DNA of 63,623 nt, filler included, from Octopus bimaculoides (GCF_001194135.2; 5 parts of 5 records of this genome joined end to end with filler, not necessarily neighbours in it), one strand, 5' to 3'; counted from the first letter of the whole stretch, positions 47,739 to 55,729 are shown. Translations and numbers: made by a program. Notes: generated by a model from the letters alone, not told the origin.

Positions 47739-48919
47739 CTGAAAACAATGAAGAAATAGTTAGAGATGTAAATATTTCTGGGGATATTTTCTGTTCCTAC
47801 AAATATATAAATACATATGATAATATATTTGTAATAAACTATACGATATTNNNNNNNNNNAAGAAAATATTCGTTATATATTCACATGATATATACAGAG
47901 ATTTAAACATCTATTGGATATACTCATACATTAAAATGCTCATCAGTTATATTGGAAGATTAACATATCACATAGACTTATAGACACTTTAAAATATTAA
48001 TTTGACATATTCACCAATTAAAGATCAATATGTCGATAGATTAAATATTAAAATATATATTTGGATTAATAGGTTACATAAAGGAATGCACGTGTAGAGA
48101 TTAAATTATGATATTGCATAATTATATACACTAATATCCATGTGTTGTTAAACGTATGTAAATCGGTACTTATGTAGAGGAAACGATTCAAAGTAACATA
48201 TAATCCAAAAATCTACTGAATAGGGTGGGAATCGATTAAGCTGTCTCTATTAATTGGTGGCTGATCGAATTACAGATTATATCAAAAAATGAAAGACAGA
48301 CACTCACACAAACGCTCACATATTTAATTTAGGATATTTTTATGAACGGGTTAGTTGGTGGAAGTTGTCTTATTCTCTGCCTTGACTGCCTCCATTTCAC
48401 GGTCTTTTACTTTTTATACCATTGTCTTGACTCATGTCACCATTCTCATCTGCCCCCTTATAATACACAGATTAATAGTAAATAGAGACATCGACCTAAC
48501 GAAATAATATCAACAAAGAACATGTTATCTATTAACAATTCTTCATCATCCTCAACGTTTCATCTGTTGTCAATATCTACAAGTACAACTCAACTTTCAG
48601 ATCAACTGAACGGTGGGTAGTCATTGATTCCAATTTAACAACGTTTAACATTTCGACCGTCTTATTCACCTGAATGGTACTGTTTTGGATGGTGATTCTT
48701 CAAACTATAGCACTTCATGTAGGCCTTATCATTCTCACAGCATATCTCGTGTGTATGTAAATGAAACTCTACTTTCATCTCTCTATAATGAATAAATCTA
48801 TCATTTAACAAGTTATATCATATATTTAGGGACTGGCTAAGCGCATTGCAACGGTTTTCAAATACACATTATTTGTGTATAAAGATATAAAGCAAAATAT
48901 TATTCAAATTTTGATTCAC

Positions 48920-48959
48920 CTGCAACAAAGAGGGCCGCGATAAGTATATACTTGTACAT
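48920..48959 (-). CDS. Gene 1 exon 1 CDS: signal peptide MYKYILIAALFVA, phase 1. Product is a small secreted Cys-rich protein of unknown family.
   Basis: ttcaacATG context; 40 nt followed by donor gtgaat; TATA box 94 nt upstream of the ATG; splices in frame to exon 2. Confidence 0.88.
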
Positions 48960-49045
48960 GTTGAAAGATGTTTTTACTGGTATTTCAGATGGTCTCAGCA
49001 GTAGTTCAGTAAGGCGTTGAATAATTATAGTGAAAACGCTCCTTA

Positions 49046-49053
49046 TATTTATA
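49046..49053 (-). promoter_or_regulatory. TATA box of gene 1
   Basis: TATAAATA, with an Inr-like TTATTC about 30 nt downstream. Confidence 0.7.
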
Positions 49054-49097
49054 GTTACATATACCTCATTAATATTAATTACATTATTGATTGCTAC

Positions 49098-49108
49098 CAA
49101 CATATGTG
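49098..49108 (-). promoter_or_regulatory. CATATG E-box (CACATATGTTG), 45 nt upstream of the gene 1 TATA box
   Basis: The same 11-mer, in gene orientation, occurs upstream of gene 2. Confidence 0.4.
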
Positions 49109-49884
49109 TCCCATACGTTCTGACATTATTTGAACATTAATTAAATTTCATTCAAATATTTCAGTAGAATATTTACACTATAGTCTTGTATTGTTTCTCT
49201 TTTGTGTAAATACATATGTAAATAAGTTAATTACCCATCATTCAATGTTCACAATTAAAGTCCCAATACCGTTAGCTTTACTTTATAAACATCTGTCATA
49301 CTTTTACACCTGAATTAATACTAGTAATATAGATTTTGTTTTTAGAATTCCTTTCAATTTGTAAACTAAGAGTTTCGATATAAATGAATAAAGTTTTGAA
49401 ATTAAGAACAAAAGCCAAATAAATTATTTCCCTACCTCATTATCATTGACACGTGGTAAAATTGAACTCTGAATAATAAAATAAGAAAGCATACTATCAT
49501 GCAACTTGACGATTTTGTGATACGGTTTCGATTTTTGGAAAAGCGGCAATGACCATTGGAGCTCAAAAATTTCTCATCAATCTAAAATCGTGGATTAGAG
49601 AAGAGTGGTAATATGGTGAGAAATTACAGGCTTTTCTGAAAGGGAAAAATATCCACAAATAAATTAATCAACTAGCGTATGTGGTGTTTTGACCTGCCAA
49701 TAATAGCAGCGAAATACTGCTCATTCCACATATAAATACTCTTTGGAATAAATACCGTTGTTGATCTAGCTATAGACCTAGCTGTAGACCTAGCTATAGA
49801 CACCTTTAATTTTCAAAATCTTTTATTTCGTACGCAAAGCGAACAATCGAAATGTAACCGATAGGTAGGACTACATACTTTAGT

Positions 49885-51050
49885 ATTTAGCTGACAGTCC
49901 CTTTGCAGTTTTTTTATTCAGAAACTCTTTTTGTCGTTGAACTGATGAGCTTTGTGATTGTCTCTTGTGAAATCTCTGCTCACTTTTCACGCAAAAATCG
50001 AATCAATTCAACTTTAGATTTAGGTTTTTGTCGAGTTCTCCGTATAGTTCTATCTAGTATGCTCCAAAGATTTTCAATTGGGTTCATGTCNNNNNNNNNN
50101 CTATCTAGTATGCTCCAAAGATTTTCAATTGGGTTCATGTCAGGAGATTGACTCGACCAAGGAAGATTTTTGATCCCATTTTCAGTCAGCCATTGCTGAT
50201 TCCTTTTCGCTGTGTGGCATGGAGTCCCATCTTCCATGAATAAAACTCTTTTTTTGTTATGTTATCTTGTGAATACATCGGATGTAGTCCTTGCTTAAGC
50301 ATTTCGATGTGTTTATCAGTTTATGGTTCCAATACATTTGATCAGCTCTGAACGACCATTGCTGGTGACAGCTCCCCATGCCATTACAGAGATACCTCCT
50401 TGTTTCACAGTCGGCTGGAGTAGTTTCAAATCAAATTCTTGATTAGGAAGCCTCCACGGACAAATACGTCCACTGTCTGAAAATAATGCAAATATAGATT
50501 CATCTCAGAAATCACTCTATCCCAAAATGAAGTGGATTTTTCTGACATCTCCTTAGCCNNNNNNNNNNATCCCAAAATGAAGTGGATTTTTCTGACATCT
50601 CCTTAGCCCATTTCTTTCATTTTATGATATTAATTGGTTGAAGGAGAGGTGTTCTTCTAGCTGCTCGTCCATAATACCCAAGGTTATGCAGATATGTAAC
50701 ANNNNNNNNNNATAATACCCAAGGTTATGCAGATATGTAACACATGTTCTTGGACTAACTTTGACCTGTTTGCAATCTCAGAAGCCTTCGAACGGGGTTC
50801 GTTTTCCACAATTCTCTTCAAACAGCGNNNNNNNNNNTCTCTTCAAACAGCGAAGCTTCCTTTCCGAGGGCTCAGGTCGGCCGGGACGAGAATTTGTTGA
50901 TTCTTTTCCTTGGCTTATGAATTGCACTATAATTCTATTATTAACAGTAACAAGAGGGATTTGAAGATTTTGGGCAATCTTTCGCTGGCTAAGACCAGCC
51001 TCAGTTTGCCCAACAATACGACCTCTATGAAAATCTAACAGATTTGCTGA
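49885..51050 (-). mobile_element. Decayed Tc1 transposon (DD34E transposase)
   Basis: N-terminal [28 protein letters not shown], followed by first-D (DES), MAWGA, MEDGTPCH and SPDMNPIENLW motifs; 34 residues between D and E; stops and frameshifts; TIRs not located. Confidence 0.9.
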
Positions 51051-51086
51051 ATATATATATATATATATATATATATNNNNNNNNNN

Positions 51087-51111
<25 letters not shown>

Positions 51112-51118
<7 letters not shown>

Positions 51119-51482
51119 TGGAGTTGGCCCCTTTGACTACTACTGTATGATCTCTATCTTTCAGAAAATTATATAGGCACTTCCCTAGTATTCCCATTGG
51201 ACGGAGATCATGCAGTTTATAACATATTATACGATGATCGACTTCATCGACGACTTTCAGAAAGTTGAGATTTATCCTATCCACATTTGAATGGTTAAGC
51301 AAGTGCTTCAGCACCCGGTTATAGTGTTGTAAGAACTACTTCAGTCAGCTATTCCTTCGTCGGAAAGCATTTTGGGTGTTGTGAGAAAGTAATTTTCTTC
51401 CAATAACGTGATTAGTTTCCCTCGGATAACTGTTCCATCGTCCCATGGCTTTGCTGACGTGCGAGATTATAGAGATGGCGTA
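51112..51482 (-). mobile_element. CR1-type LINE reverse-transcriptase fragment, decayed
   Basis: LLNHSNVDRINLNFLKVVDEVDHRIICYKL..GILGKCLYNFLKDRDHTVVVKG corresponds to the YLDFAKAFDKVDH...WIxxFLxxRxQxVxVNG region. Confidence 0.75.
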
Positions 51483-52572
51483 CATAGAAAGGGGTGGATT
51501 TACAAATGACGCTGACAAATAAATATAAAATCAAAGAGTGTGCTGAGGTATTAGGGCATTAACAATATATTCAAATTCATATATTGCCAACTGAAAAAAT
51601 ATTAGATTCGCACATTCACCTGGAGAAAATTATTTCGTATAATTCCAAATCCATATCAACTGATGTAAGCAATATGAAATAAAAACACCGACAATGATAT
51701 ATTAACGATTACACATAGATTCCTCCTTCACATTATCTTTTATTTTTTCTCTACTACTATTGTCTGTTATGATTCTGAATATTTCCAATGTAGTCGCTGC
51801 TCACACTTGAGTATAGAACTATATAAATACAAGTAAAATCTTTCAGAATCACTCTCCTTATCTCTGCACTTTTCTGTAAGAAAACCTGTTAATTAAATTG
51901 AGAAGTTTTGAACTCGAAAAGTAGAATTAAAAATTTCCTAAATTTAAACTAATTTCATGATTTAATAACGACCACAAGAATGAGTTTTTCTTCAAATTTT
52001 ATATATGTTTTCAACAAGATTGCGGATTATAAGTGTTTATCTGTTAATCCTTTATAATACTTTCTAATATTTATATGAGCAAAATATTTCTTTTCTAGAA
52101 TTAAAACCTATCATGTAGAAACAAATTGATATTTCTTAAAATGTATTTAAAGAAAGTATTAAATTAATTAACTTGTATGAAAATTCATAGGTATATATGC
52201 AAAGGGATTTATTGTTCAAAGATTAACGATGACAGATATCATTTTATGAGGAAACAATATTGAAATAAAATTGAAATATCTTTCATTAAGAATATTAAAA
52301 TCTTGATGCTTGGACAGTTGGTAAAAGTTAATAAATATCATATATAGATATTCCACCCAATCTGATTTCGAAACCTTAACATTTATTTTGAATAATTGAG
52401 AAACATATTAACATCTACTGTGTCACATTTTGTAAAGAATTATTTCAGCTAAAAGAATTATTATTGTAAATAATTTATCAATAACATCTAATTAATGTAA
52501 TTAAAATCAACTTTCGATAATGAAGAGAAATGAATTTCAATGCCTCAATATAGATTATGAAGAAGACCTTGT

Positions 52573-52583
52573 CACATATGTTG
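52573..52583 (+). promoter_or_regulatory. CATATG E-box (CACATATGTTG), 90 nt upstream of the gene 2 TATA box
   Basis: Identical 11-mer to the gene 1 promoter. Confidence 0.4.
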
Positions 52584-52672
52584 CACTCTTTTTGTGCATG
52601 TCTTTCAAAAGAACATTTCATTCAGAGATATTTCAATGAATAAATTAGCCTATCGATTCAACTTTACACTCT

Positions 52673-52680
52673 TATAAATA
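52673..52680 (+). promoter_or_regulatory. TATA box of gene 2
   Basis: TATAAATA 88 nt upstream of the ATG at 52761. Confidence 0.68.
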
Positions 52681-52760
52681 TGCTTCGTTGTTGCTTGTAA
52701 AACACTCACATCACAACACAGCTGAAGAGATCCTCGCCGAGAAGATAAAAACATATCAAA

Positions 52761-52800
52761 AATGTTGAGACTTATCGTACTTGTCACCGTCTGCATTGTG
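52761..52800 (+). CDS. Gene 2 exon 1 CDS: signal peptide MLRLIVLVTVCIV, phase 1 (secreted protein)
   Basis: caaaaATG context; 40 nt followed by consensus donor gtaagt; basic n-region plus hydrophobic h-region; same length and phase as gene 1 exon 1. Confidence 0.78.
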
Positions 52801-53159
52801 GGTAAGTCAGCTTCTATGTCATTCTCTTAGATGATGCTGTTATTGAAATTTAAAGAAGCACTAAGTATCACATGTATATGTTTATTAATCCTGTTGTATA
52901 TGATTATATATGCAGTTTGTTTATATTGCTTCTGTATAGGTTTTCGTTTCGTAGATGCAATTAATGAAGCAAGCGGCATTAAGAAGACTTGAGAGGCTGA
53001 TACATATATCAGTTGATCCGTCATCTTCCTTCTAACGAAGCTTCGGTGCCGTCCATATACTATACATTCCCTCTNNNNNNNNNNTTCCTTCTAACGAAGC
53101 TTCGGTGCCGTCCATATACTATACATTCCCTCTTCCTTCTCTTCATTACACACATATGT

Positions 53160-53370
53160 AGCGAAGGTGCATGGCCTAGTGGTTAGTGTGCTGGTCTCAC
53201 AATAGCAAGATTGTGGCTTCGATTTCTGCGCGGAGCGTTGTGTCGTTGAGCAAAACACTTCATTTCACTTTCCTCCGGTCCACTCAGCTACAAATAAGTG
53301 GATATACCATAGACTGGAGACCCACATAGCGGGTGGGAACGTTGTGATCCCGATCACTTCCACAGAGTAG
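53160..53370 (+). mobile_element. SINE family D-like copy with a different tail, diverged
   Basis: GGCCTAGTGGTTAGTGTG head and GAGCAAAACACTTCATTTCAC..CCACTCAGCT core. Confidence 0.65.
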
Positions 53371-54805
53371 CCGTTGTATAAGTTCTAAGACCTGTCTAGC
53401 ACCATAAGTTGCACAGCCGTTCAGATACGGTAGCTTCGAATGGCAAATGCATTATGAACTTAGGTTGTCAATATATTAAGTATTTTGTAACAATGTGAAC
53501 AAGATTAGTCGACTGTTTGCAATCTTTATGCACGAAACTAAGTATCTTTAGTGTAAGAACTACACTCATTGAAGTTACCAATGGTTTGAGGAAAATACAC
53601 GCGCCACTTGTTGTGCTTTCAAAACATTTTCTTCATCATTATGTATAATATTTTAAAATATATGAAAGAAGANNNNNNNNNNAATTCAAGTGACTTGGAA
53701 ATGTGTAAATTGGGTTACAGGAAATTCTGAGCCTTTTAGTCGTAATGCGTTAACGACACAGTAAATTTACATATTGGTTTTGCTAAGTTATCCTTTCTCA
53801 CTGATTCAAAAAATTTATGCATATATTTATATATGCATACATTGAATAATAATTATGAATGCACACACACACAAACATACATACGCGATAAGTATGGCCG
53901 AATGCTTCCACTCGCAAAGATGCAGGCCTGCGTTGAAACCTCTGCATTGTCATTTGGTTAAATGTTATTTCGTACTTGCAGGTCGACCCATAGGGGTTTG
54001 GGTAGATGGAAAACGTAGGGATTCGAAACATATAGTCTTGTAACAAACTGATTCATGCTCATTCTGCTTGAGTATTCCGGTAAGGGTACATGCATCCTTG
54101 GAATACATAGCCACGTACATATTTATTAAGAAGTACAATTGTCTGATACCCTGAATCCTCACCGTCAAAAAAAGTGTGTGTGTGNNNNNNNNNNNNNNNN
54201 NNNNNNNNNNNNNNNNNNNNNNNNNNNNNNNNNNNNNNNNNNNNNNNNNNNNNNNNNNNNNNNNNNNNNNNNNNNNNNNNNNNNNNNNNNNNNNNNNNNN
54301 NNNNNNNNNNNNNNNNNNNNNNNNNNNNNNNNNNNNNNNNNNNNNNNNNNNNNNNNNNNNNNNNNNNNNNNNNNNNNNNNNNNNNNNNNNNNNNNNNNNN
54401 NNNNNNNNNNNNNNNNNNNNNNNNNNNNNNNNNNNNNNNNNNNNNNNNNNNNNNNNNNNNNNNNNNNNNNNNNNNNNNNNNNNNNNNNNNNNNNNNNNNN
54501 NNNNNNNNNNNNNNNNNNNNNNNNNNNNNNNNNNNNNNNNNNNNNNNNNNNNNNNNNNNNNNNNNNNNNNNNNNNNNNNNNNNNNNNNNNNNNNNNNNNN
54601 NNNNNNNNNNNNNNNNNNNNNNNNNNNNNNNNNNNNNNNNNNNNNNNNNNNNNNNNNNNNNNNNNNNNNNNNNNNNNNNNNNNNNNNNNNNNNNNNNNNN
54701 NNNNNNNNNNNNNNNNNNNNNNNNNNNNNNNNNNNNNNNNNNNNNNNNNNNNNNNNNNNNNNNNNNNNNNNNNNNNNNNNNNNNNNNNNNNNNNNNNNNN
54801 NNNNN

Positions 54806-54838
54806 GCGTTGCAAAGAAAATGTATATGAAATTATGTG
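54806..54838 (+). CDS. Gene 2: candidate 3' end of an internal exon emerging from a gap (VAKKMYMKLC + G, phase 1)
   Basis: Consensus donor gtg|gtgagt at 54839; this frame ends on Cys + phase 1, like gene 1 exon 3 (FMDSVC). An alternative frame, RCKENVYEIM, is also open. Confidence 0.45.
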
Positions 54839-55071
54839 GTGAGTTTTAGGTTCATGTTCTTTCATTAATATGTGTAGATACGGAATAATTTTGCATTCTG
54901 ATCTCTTCCACATGTATAGATTATAGTCATAGACATATACATATAATTGTGTGAGGATGTGTGTGTGTGTTTGTGTGTGTGTGTTTGTTTGTGTGTGCCT
55001 GTGTATGTGTGTGTGTACATATGTATATAATGCAATGCCACGTTCGCGGAATGACTTGTATTATATTACAT

Positions 55072-55102
<31 letters not shown>

Positions 55103-55360
55103 ATTTGTGTGTGTGTGTCTGTGTGTGAGTGTGTGTATGTGTGCATATACATGTATGTGTGTGTCTTCATACATGTGTGTGTGTGAGTGTATACATATAT
55201 GTTCCTGTACTTTGAACTAATTTGGTTTTTTATAACTNNNNNNNNNNNNNNNNNNNNNNNNNNNNNNNNNNNNNNNNNNNNNNNNNNNNNNNNNNNNNNN
55301 NNNNNNNNNNNNNNNNNNNNNNNNNNNNNNNNNNNNNNNNNNNNNNNNNNNNNNNNNNNN

Positions 55361-55386
55361 GCTGCCGGTTATCAAATGCTGCAAGG
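55361..55386 (+). CDS. Gene 2: candidate 3' end of a further exon emerging from a gap (frame undetermined)
   Basis: Consensus donor agg|gtgagt at 55387; CTAAT branch-like motif and a T-tract sit just before the gap (55217-55237); all three frames are open over the visible 26 nt. Confidence 0.4.
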
Positions 55387-55729
55387 GTGAGTTATTATTA
55401 TTATTATTATTATTATTATCATTATTATTATAATTTTATGTTTGACATTTGCTTTACATTTGTTACAATTTTGCTCCATGTCTCACCCAGAATCTTCAAG
55501 AGACAAGTTAGAAGTTCAAGTTGGTGCTTAGAGTGCCATATATTTGGTTTTGTACATAGTGTTGTTCTAGAGAANNNNNNNNNNTATATTTGGTTTTGTA
55601 CATAGTGTTGTTCTAGAGAATGTTTAAGAAACCACAAGAAGATTATGTTTGTTTTAAAACATGAGATTAAATAGAAAGAATTTCGCGTAGGATATGGGCA
55701 GTTTCCATGAGCACTATCTTTTTAATTTC

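What the first reader, a model, noticed from the sequence alone, without database searches (positions are those of the whole stretch)
48920..55386. Head-to-head pair of secreted-protein genes with matching first-exon architecture
Seen: gene 1 (minus) and gene 2 (plus) diverge from a 3.6-kb interval. Both have TATAAATA about 90 nt before the ATG and a 40-nt, 13-codon, phase-1 signal-peptide exon. Gene 2 has two more consensus donors at gap edges (54839, 55387), the first ending ...MYMKLC + G in the same phase as gene 1 exon 3 (...FMDSVC + G). Inference: an inverted paralog pair or a co-regulated secretory locus, with most of gene 2's coding sequence hidden in the 621-N and 123-N gaps. An alternative short exon 2 at 52940 would give MLRLIVLVTVCIVGFRFVDAINEASGIKKT*.
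Basis: partly seen in the sequence, partly recalled or inferred. Interest (0 to 1): 0.72.

Follow-up and report, generated by a model that had tools for sequence, protein, structure and literature searches.

The report
Two head-to-head small secreted-protein genes
Two small genes for secreted proteins face away from each other in an AT-rich animal genome; one is complete and has no known relatives, the other is known only from its first exon, and nothing shows they are copies of each other.

Summary
Gene 1 (minus strand) and gene 2 (plus strand) each have TATAAATA at -94 and -89 from the first ATG. Each then has a 40-nt, 13-codon, hydrophobic, phase-1 first exon with a GT donor. This composite is expected about 0.02 times per piece by chance and is seen twice. 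The six 10-N gaps in the finding are unmerged contig overlaps (15-49 bp duplicated flanks) and none touches an exon.

Gene 1 splices cleanly into a 101-aa pre-protein from 4 exons. It has a signal peptide and an 84-aa acidic mature part with 8 Cys. Exons 2 and 4 share an internal repeat. No Pfam, PDB or protein-database relative was found.

Gene 2 is only a first exon plus two exon-end fragments at the edges of large gaps.

Paralogy is not supported:
- No protein or DNA similarity beyond the 5' layout.
- The 5'UTR similarity is weak (p about 0.01).
- A phase-1 Gly-splitting intern boundary after a signal-peptide exon is the generic pattern for secreted-protein genes.

The 3.6-kb spacer is about one third decayed Tc1/mariner transposon, and each gene has its own TATA box, so this is not a shared bidirectional promoter. 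Verdict: an ordinary, probably lineage-restricted, secreted-protein locus of low to moderate interest.

The parts
49046..49053 (-). Gene 1 TATA box (TATAAATA), 94 nt upstream of the ATG
48920..48959 (-). Gene 1 exon 1 coding part, 40 nt, MYKYILIAALFVA + G, phase 1, donor GTGAAT
   Evidence: GC 0.42 against 0.30 in intron 1
47642..47738 (-). Gene 1 exon 2, 97 nt, (G)VYGECNTGVAFSCVVSKFNELGRAFDRATLC + AA. Acceptor TTGTTTTCAG, donor GTAAGA. Holds the predicted signal cleavage site VYG|EC and the first copy of the C-x7-C-V...LG module
46940..47016 (-). Gene 1 exon 3, 77 nt, (N)DLSGVSDCMKAADCADGASFMDSVC + G. Acceptor TGTATTACAG, donor GTATGT
   Evidence: GC 0.51
46732..46823 (-). Gene 1 exon 4, 92 nt including the TAA stop, (A)DPNCDANVASECVLRMSASLGILSAGGAM*. 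Second copy of the C-x7-C-V...LG module. The stop overlaps a possible donor GCTAT|GTAAGA
   Evidence: GC 0.51
49881..51050 (-). Decayed Tc1/mariner transposase relic with frameshifts and stops and no terminal inverted repeats found; it fills about a third of the intergenic interval (boundaries approximate)
   Evidence: (DDE_3 E = 4.2e-10)
51051..51112 (.). (TA)n microsatellite containing the 10-N gap at 51077
52673..52680 (+). Gene 2 TATA box (TATAAATA), 89 nt upstream of the ATG
52762..52801 (+). Gene 2 exon 1 coding part, 40 nt, MLRLIVLVTVCIV + G, phase 1, donor GTAAGT at 52802
   Evidence: GC 0.45 against 0.28 downstream
52940..52993 (+). Good acceptor, but no internal donor and no poly(A) signal nearby; probably not used
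54806..54838 (+). Fragment F1 at the edge of the 621-N gap, followed by GTGAGT. ...VAKKMYMKLC+G (phase 1) or ...RCKENVYEIMW (phase 0). GC 0.30 is intron-like, so it is a weak exon candidate
55361..55386 (+). Fragment F2 at the edge of the 123-N gap, followed by GTGAGT. All three frames are open; the Cys frame ...LPVIKCCK+G is phase 1. GC 0.54 is exon-like
55491..55671 (+). Candidate terminal exon after a strong acceptor (CTCCATGTCTCACCCAG). It gives short ORFs in all three entry phases. It ends at ATTAAA (55666-55671), the only poly(A) hexamer on this strand downstream of gene 2 exon 1
53151..53345 (+). SINE-like insertion (GC 0.49) in the presumed first intron of gene 2. Neither ARAGORN nor Rfam recognises it as tRNA
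   Evidence: the SINE reading is by eye and from memory

Best explanation
These are two separate, TATA-driven animal genes for small secreted proteins. They lie head to head by about 3.6 kb, and each has its own promoter.

Gene 1 is complete in the readable sequence. Transcription would start about 30 nt after the TATA box at 49053. Four exons splice (phases 1, 2, 1) into a 101-aa pre-protein. The N-terminal signal peptide directs it into the ER and is probably cut after Gly17 (AGVYG|EC). The released product is an 84-aa, 8.5-kDa, acidic (pI 4.1) protein with 8 cysteines, enough for four disulfides. It contains a duplicated C-x7-C-V-x8-LG module encoded by exons 2 and 4, both of which start in phase 1. 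It has no dibasic processing sites, no transmembrane segment and no recognisable domain. It most likely acts outside the cell as a compact, disulfide-stabilised soluble protein of a lineage-restricted family. Its particular role (signal, defence or matrix) is not determined.

Gene 2 starts the same way, with a TATA box, a first AUG and a 13-codon hydrophobic exon in phase 1. The rest of it is unread or unrecognised. The plus-strand exon-end fragment at 55386, the acceptor at 55491 and the ATTAAA at 55666 probably mark its 3' part.

The matching first-exon layout mostly reflects the general rule that secreted-protein genes carry a phase-1, Gly-splitting intron near the cleavage site. It does not show recent duplication.

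Shown here: the sequence features, their improbability by chance, the nature of the gaps, and the lack of similarity. Inferred: transcription, secretion, disulfides, and the linkage of the downstream fragments to gene 2.
For: - The spliced gene 1 ORF is 306 nt, is a multiple of 3, has GT/AG at all three introns with pyrimidine-rich acceptors, and ends in TAA.
- Exon GC is 0.40-0.51 against 0.28-0.30 in the introns. Only 3% of 90-nt windows reach 0.47.
- The composite start signature is expected 0.0225 times per piece and is observed twice.
- The hydrophobic cores have a maximum 9-residue Kyte-Doolittle mean of 3.2 and 3.5.
- Mature gene 1 has 8 Cys and pI 4.1. The exon 2 / exon 4 repeat has p about 0.002.
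- No paralogous exon is found, and no DNA-level inverted duplication.
- A Tc1 relic lies between the genes.
- The excess of phase-1 introns at signal-peptide cleavage sites, at Gly codons, is documented (PMC1626468).
- No phase-compatible exon of gene 2 is found in readable sequence.
- A strong acceptor and the only ATTAAA lie at the plus-strand 3' end.
Against: - There is no transcript evidence of any kind.
- No homologue was found for gene 1, so conservation cannot support the gene model.
- No AATAAA or ATTAAA follows within 725 nt downstream of the gene 1 stop. The stop also overlaps a possible donor, so the true C-terminus could differ.
- Gene 2 consists of a single 40-nt exon plus unlinked fragments. 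F1 has intron-like GC.
- The identical 40-nt exon length, the similar TATA spacing and the 5'UTR similarity (p about 0.01) are mild evidence for common ancestry, which this explanation treats as unproven.
Confidence: 0.6

Rival explanations
1. Inverted paralog pair. An old inverted duplication produced two related secreted Cys-rich protein genes, and the homologous exons of gene 2 lie in the unread gaps.
For: - Both first exons are 40 nt and phase 1, with TATAAATA at -94 and -89.
- The global TATA-to-donor alignment beats all 612 control windows, though most of that score comes from the three features that defined the pair.
- The 5'UTR alone gives p about 0.01.
- A shared TAAAAACAT lies 7-8 nt before each ATG.
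- F1 ends ...KLC+G in the same phase as gene 1 exon 3, which ends ...SVC+G.
Against: - No protein similarity in any readable part.
- No intron or flank similarity above the control orientation.
- F2 ends in a donor, so the plus-strand gene has more exons than gene 1.
- Readable gene 2 fragments are basic, whereas gene 1 is acidic.
- F1 has intron-like GC.
- Phase 1 with a split Gly is generic for secreted proteins.
Confidence: 0.2
2. Gene 2 is not a working gene. Its first exon is a stranded remnant, for example of a duplicate disrupted by the transposon and SINE insertions. The fragments at 54838 and 55386 would then belong to another transcript or to none.
For: - No phase-compatible exon in the 1.4 kb after exon 1.
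- A SINE-like insertion and large gaps follow.
- F1 is compositionally intron-like, and GTGAGT is seen 7 times against 3.3 expected, partly inside (TG)n runs.
Against: - The promoter, first AUG, hydrophobic exon and GTAAGT donor are all intact, and GTAAGT occurs only once in the piece.
- F2, the strong acceptor and ATTAAA form a coherent 3' end on the same strand.
- 744 unread bases could hold the missing exons.
Confidence: 0.15
3. Neither is a gene: chance ORFs and chance motifs in AT-rich DNA.
For: - No homologues and no transcripts are available.
- TATAAATA is fairly common here, with 7 copies.
Against: - The composite signature is expected 0.02 times per piece and is seen twice.
- Gene 1 has a 4-exon open frame with three consensus introns, exon-specific GC enrichment, an even number of Cys and an internal repeat.
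Confidence: 0.04

Closest known systems
Lineage-restricted small secreted cysteine-rich proteins of animals (general class)
   Same: - A short pre-protein of about 100 aa with an N-terminal signal peptide.
- An even number of Cys in a small mature chain.
- No recognisable domain.
- A signal-peptide exon followed by a phase-1 intron.
   Different: This is a descriptive class, not a homologous family. No member with sequence similarity to gene 1 was found.
Attractin, water-borne protein pheromone of Aplysia (PDB 1T50)
   Same: - A small acidic secreted mollusc-type protein with closely spaced Cys.
- A local match between DPNCDANVASEC (gene 1 exon 4) and DQNCDIGNITSQC (attractin N-terminus).
   Different: - The match covers only 13-16 residues, with p about 0.02 for a comparison chosen after seeing the data.
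- Gene 1 has 8 Cys with different spacing, against 6 in attractin.
- The IEECKTS-type motif (recalled from memory as conserved among attractins) is absent.
- phmmer finds no PDB hit.
Gene 1 is not a member.
Bidirectional (head-to-head) promoter gene pairs
   Same: Divergent orientation of two neighbouring genes.
   Different: - The starts are about 3.6 kb apart. The usual definition (from general knowledge) is less than 1 kb.
- Each gene has its own TATA box.
- The spacer contains a transposon relic.
Tc1/mariner DNA transposons (the spacer element)
   Same: The DDE_3 catalytic domain and an N-terminal HTH-like region are recognisable. The nearest database proteins are Tc1-type transposases.
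   Different: It has frameshifts and stop codons, and no terminal inverted repeats were found. It is a dead copy.

Membership tests
Secretory pre-protein with a cleavable N-terminal signal peptide | Short polar or basic n-region, a hydrophobic h-region of 7-15 residues, and small residues at -3 and -1 before the cleavage site | tested here: met
   Gene 1 reads MYK-YILIAALFVA-GVYG|E, with V at -3, G at -1 and a maximum 9-residue hydropathy of 3.2. This was judged by inspection; no SignalP was available. Gene 2 shows MLR-LIVLVTVCIV (hydropathy 3.5), but its c-region lies in an unknown exon.
Inverted paralog pair | Detectable similarity between the two protein products | tested here: inconclusive
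   No similarity in any readable part. Most of gene 2 is unread.
Inverted paralog pair | Shared intron positions and phases | tested here: inconclusive
   Exon 1 is identical in length and phase. This is also the generic pattern. Downstream structure differs: gene 2 has at least one more donor than gene 1.
Inverted paralog pair | DNA similarity of introns or flanks in inverted orientation (for a recent duplication) | tested here: not met
   Best blastn hits are E = 0.003 in both the paralog and the control orientation, and are low-complexity.
Bidirectional promoter pair | Transcription starts less than 1 kb apart with a shared promoter region | tested here: not met
   TATA to TATA is 3620 nt raw, about 3.4 kb after collapsing the gap artefacts. 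There are two separate TATA boxes.
Attractin family | Significant sequence similarity, the six-Cys pattern and the conserved IEECKTS-type motif | tested here: not met
   Local score p about 0.02. Gene 1 has 8 Cys with spacings 7, 17, 8, 5, 10, 4, 7. The motif is absent.
Neuropeptide or prohormone precursor | Dibasic (KR, RR, KK) processing sites flanking the peptides | tested here: not met
   The gene 1 product has no dibasic site (sequence).
Tc1/mariner transposon (spacer element) | DDE transposase domain | tested here: met
   PF13358 DDE_3, E = 4.2e-10, 40.1 bits against a cut-off of 28.6.
Tc1/mariner transposon (spacer element) | Intact ORF and terminal inverted repeats (an active element) | tested here: not met
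   There are several stops and frameshifts. No flanking inverted repeats were found.

The most novel reading that the evidence does not exclude
The two genes are anciently duplicated members of an undescribed, lineage-restricted (possibly cephalopod) family of secreted disulfide-rich proteins. The family would be built from a repeated C-x7-C-V-x8-LG module bounded by phase-1 introns, with further copies nearby, acting as extracellular signals or secretion components.
Probability: 0.12. Interest if true: 0.4.

Novelty: new member of a known kind. Interest (0 to 1): 0.2.

Why it matters
If gene 1 is transcribed, it adds one unannotated small secreted cysteine-rich protein with no detectable relatives to the gene list of its host. 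Such lineage-restricted secreted proteins are often tied to specialised tissues, so it would be a modest lead for secretome or tissue-expression studies.

The practical lessons are larger:
- The 10-N gaps in this assembly are unmerged overlaps that can simply be collapsed.
- A shared short signal exon, phase-1 intron and TATA box should not be read as evidence of paralogy.

No long-standing question is made testable by this locus.

Tried and rejected
1. Homology for gene 1 found nothing: Pfam, the word-indexed 5.8-billion-protein search, PDB sequences and JGI metagenome contigs.
I did not submit it for structure prediction because that tool states the same restriction. Single exons (at most 31 aa) are too short to be worth submitting.
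3. I tried to identify the organism through the Tc1 relic. The best hits are only 35-43% identical over most of the query and come from unrelated sources. The database therefore lacks close relatives of the host, and the empty gene 1 search is weak evidence for orphan status.
4. The attractin resemblance was validated against PDB 1T50, then rejected at p about 0.02 with the motif and Cys pattern not met.
5. An inverted duplication at the DNA level was rejected.
6. A reverse-transcriptase reading of 51113-51430 (minus strand) is not supported by Pfam.
7. A tRNA origin for the SINE-like element at 53151-53345 is not supported by ARAGORN or Rfam.
8. All Rfam microRNA hits lie in microsatellites, far below gathering scores.
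9. An alternative downstream exon for gene 1, using the donor that overlaps its stop codon, has no acceptor candidate in the piece.
Full report
**What the piece is.** The 9.7-kb piece (46007-55729) is AT-rich (33% GC). It carries (TATG)n, (TG)n, (TA)n and (TTA)n microsatellites, GT/AG-bounded exons and transposon relics. It is therefore animal nuclear DNA. From memory, the repeat landscape and a SINE-like element at 53151-53345 resemble octopus genomes. I could not test this. ARAGORN and Rfam do not recognise a tRNA there, and the nearest database relatives of the resident transposase are only 35-43% identical and come from unrelated sources.

**Gaps.** All six 10-N gaps inside the finding have the last 15-49 nt of the left flank repeated at the start of the right flank. 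They are contig overlaps that the assembler failed to merge. After collapsing them, the Tc1 transposase reading frame runs straight through the joins at 50091, 50702 and 50828, and the Pfam DDE_3 match spans the 50091 join. This independently confirms continuity. The 51077 gap is inside a (TA)n run. The 53075 gap is in an intron. None touches an exon of either gene. The 621-N and 123-N gaps show no flank overlap and hide real sequence.

**The observation.** It is accurate.
- Gene 1, minus strand: TATAAATA at 49053-49046 (-94), ATG at 48959, a 40-nt exon MYKYILIAALFVA+G, donor GTGAAT.
- Gene 2, plus strand: TATAAATA at 52673-52680 (-89), ATG at 52762, a 40-nt exon MLRLIVLVTVCIV+G, donor GTAAGT.
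- GTGAGT donors follow short readable stretches at 54839 and 55387.

I scanned both strands for a composite signature: TATAAA 50-130 nt upstream, an ATG, an open hydrophobic exon of 31-70 nt, and a good donor. It is expected 0.0225 times per piece in Markov simulations and occurs exactly twice, at these two sites. Both starts are therefore very probably real.

**Gene 1.** Four exons (48959-48920, 47738-47642, 47016-46940, 46823-46732) join through consensus GT/AG introns in phases 1, 2 and 1. They form a 306-nt ORF ending in TAA. Exon GC is 0.40-0.51 against 0.28-0.30 in the introns.

The 101-aa product is MYKYILIAALFVAGVYGECNTGVAFSCVVSKFNELGRAFDRATLCNDLSGVSDCMKAADCADGASFMDSVCADPNCDANVASECVLRMSASLGILSAGGAM. 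It has a typical signal peptide, with likely cleavage at VYG|EC. The 84-aa mature chain is 8.5 kDa, has pI 4.1 and 8 Cys, and has no dibasic sites. Exons 2 and 4 both begin in phase 1 and encode a similar module, CNTGVAFSCVVSKFNELG and CDANVASECVLRMSASLG (p about 0.002 by shuffling). This suggests an internal exon duplication.

No relative was found in Pfam, in the word-indexed protein collection, among PDB sequences or in metagenome contigs. Because the databases also lack close relatives of the host's own transposon, the empty result does not establish that gene 1 is an orphan.

A remembered resemblance to the Aplysia pheromone attractin was checked against the deposited sequence (PDB 1T50) and is not significant (p about 0.02, 13-16 residues, different Cys pattern).

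One caveat concerns the 3' end. The stop codon overlaps a possible donor (GCTAT|GTAAGA), and no AATAAA or ATTAAA follows in the remaining 725 nt. No acceptor candidate exists there either, so the four-exon model stands for now.

**Gene 2.** Only the first exon is secure. In the readable 1.4 kb before the 621-N gap there is no convincing phase-1-compatible exon. However, it ends in a stop with no poly(A) hexamer for 2.7 kb.

Fragment F1 (54806-54838) is open in two frames but has intron-like GC of 0.30. GTGAGT is also over-represented here because of the (TG)n runs. Fragment F2 (55361-55386, GC 0.54) is more exon-like. It is followed by a 104-nt intron and a strong acceptor at 55490/55491. All three entry phases then give short ORFs ending before the only ATTAAA on this strand, at 55666. 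A plus-strand gene therefore probably ends near 55690. Its linkage to the exon at 52762 is an inference.

**Are they paralogs or co-regulated?** Beyond the features that defined the pair, similarity is weak.
- The 5'UTRs give p about 0.01 against real-sequence windows.
- Exon 1 similarity is what two hydrophobic leaders would show.
- tblastn finds no gene 1-like exon on the gene 2 side.
- blastn finds nothing in the paralog orientation that the control orientation does not also give.
- The readable gene 2 fragments are Lys-rich whereas gene 1 is acidic, and the plus-strand gene has at least one more intron.

A phase-1 intron splitting a Gly codon (G|G) close to the signal-peptide cleavage site is a documented general property of secreted-protein genes (PMC1626468). 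Only the identical 40-nt length and the similar TATA spacing remain as mild hints of common descent.

The spacer is about 3.6 kb after collapsing the artefacts. About a third of it is a dead Tc1/mariner copy (49881-51050; DDE_3 E = 4.2e-10; stops and frameshifts; no terminal repeats). Each gene has its own TATA box. This is not a bidirectional promoter.

**Verdict.** Gene 1 is a plausible, complete, previously undescribed small secreted Cys-rich protein gene of unknown family, and gene 2 is unresolved. This is a new member of a familiar kind of gene and is of low to moderate interest.

Noticed in passing
window 49881-51050 (minus strand): Decayed Tc1/mariner transposase with DDE_3 and HTH regions recognisable, several stops and frameshifts, and no terminal inverted repeats. 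It sits between the two genes.
   Followed up: yes
window 51113-51430 (minus strand): By eye the translation resembles a reverse-transcriptase fragment (QNAFRRRNS ... INLNFLKVVDEVDH ... GILGKCLYNFLKDRDHTVVVKG). Pfam gives no RT match. GC of 0.39 is above the local background.
   Followed up: partly
window 53151-53345 (plus strand): GC-rich (0.49) SINE-like insertion with a tRNA-like head by eye. From memory it resembles an abundant octopus SINE. ARAGORN and Rfam find no tRNA.
   Followed up: partly
window 47392, 50091, 50559, 50702, 50828, 51077, 53075, 55575: These 10-N gaps are flanked by 15-49 nt exact duplications, which marks them as unmerged contig overlaps. The 10-N gaps at 47851 and 53673 show no such overlap.
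   Followed up: yes
window 47642-47738 and 46732-46823 (minus strand): There is an internal repeat within gene 1. Exons 2 and 4 both start in phase 1 and encode a C-x7-C-V-x8-LG module (p about 0.002).
   Followed up: partly
window 46732-46736 (minus strand): The gene 1 stop codon overlaps a possible donor (GCTAT|GTAAGA), and no AATAAA or ATTAAA lies in the 725 nt downstream. The true 3' end of gene 1 is uncertain.
   Followed up: partly
window 51822-51885 (plus strand): Another TATAAATA lies 940 nt upstream of the gene 2 ATG, followed about 50 nt later by GTAAGA. It could be an alternative non-coding first exon or chance. TATAAATA occurs 7 times against 1.9 expected in the piece.
   Followed up: no
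window 47310-47505, 51043-51124, 54958-55220: Numerous sub-threshold Rfam microRNA hits (mir-297, mir-466 and others) all fall in microsatellites and are artefacts.
   Followed up: yes
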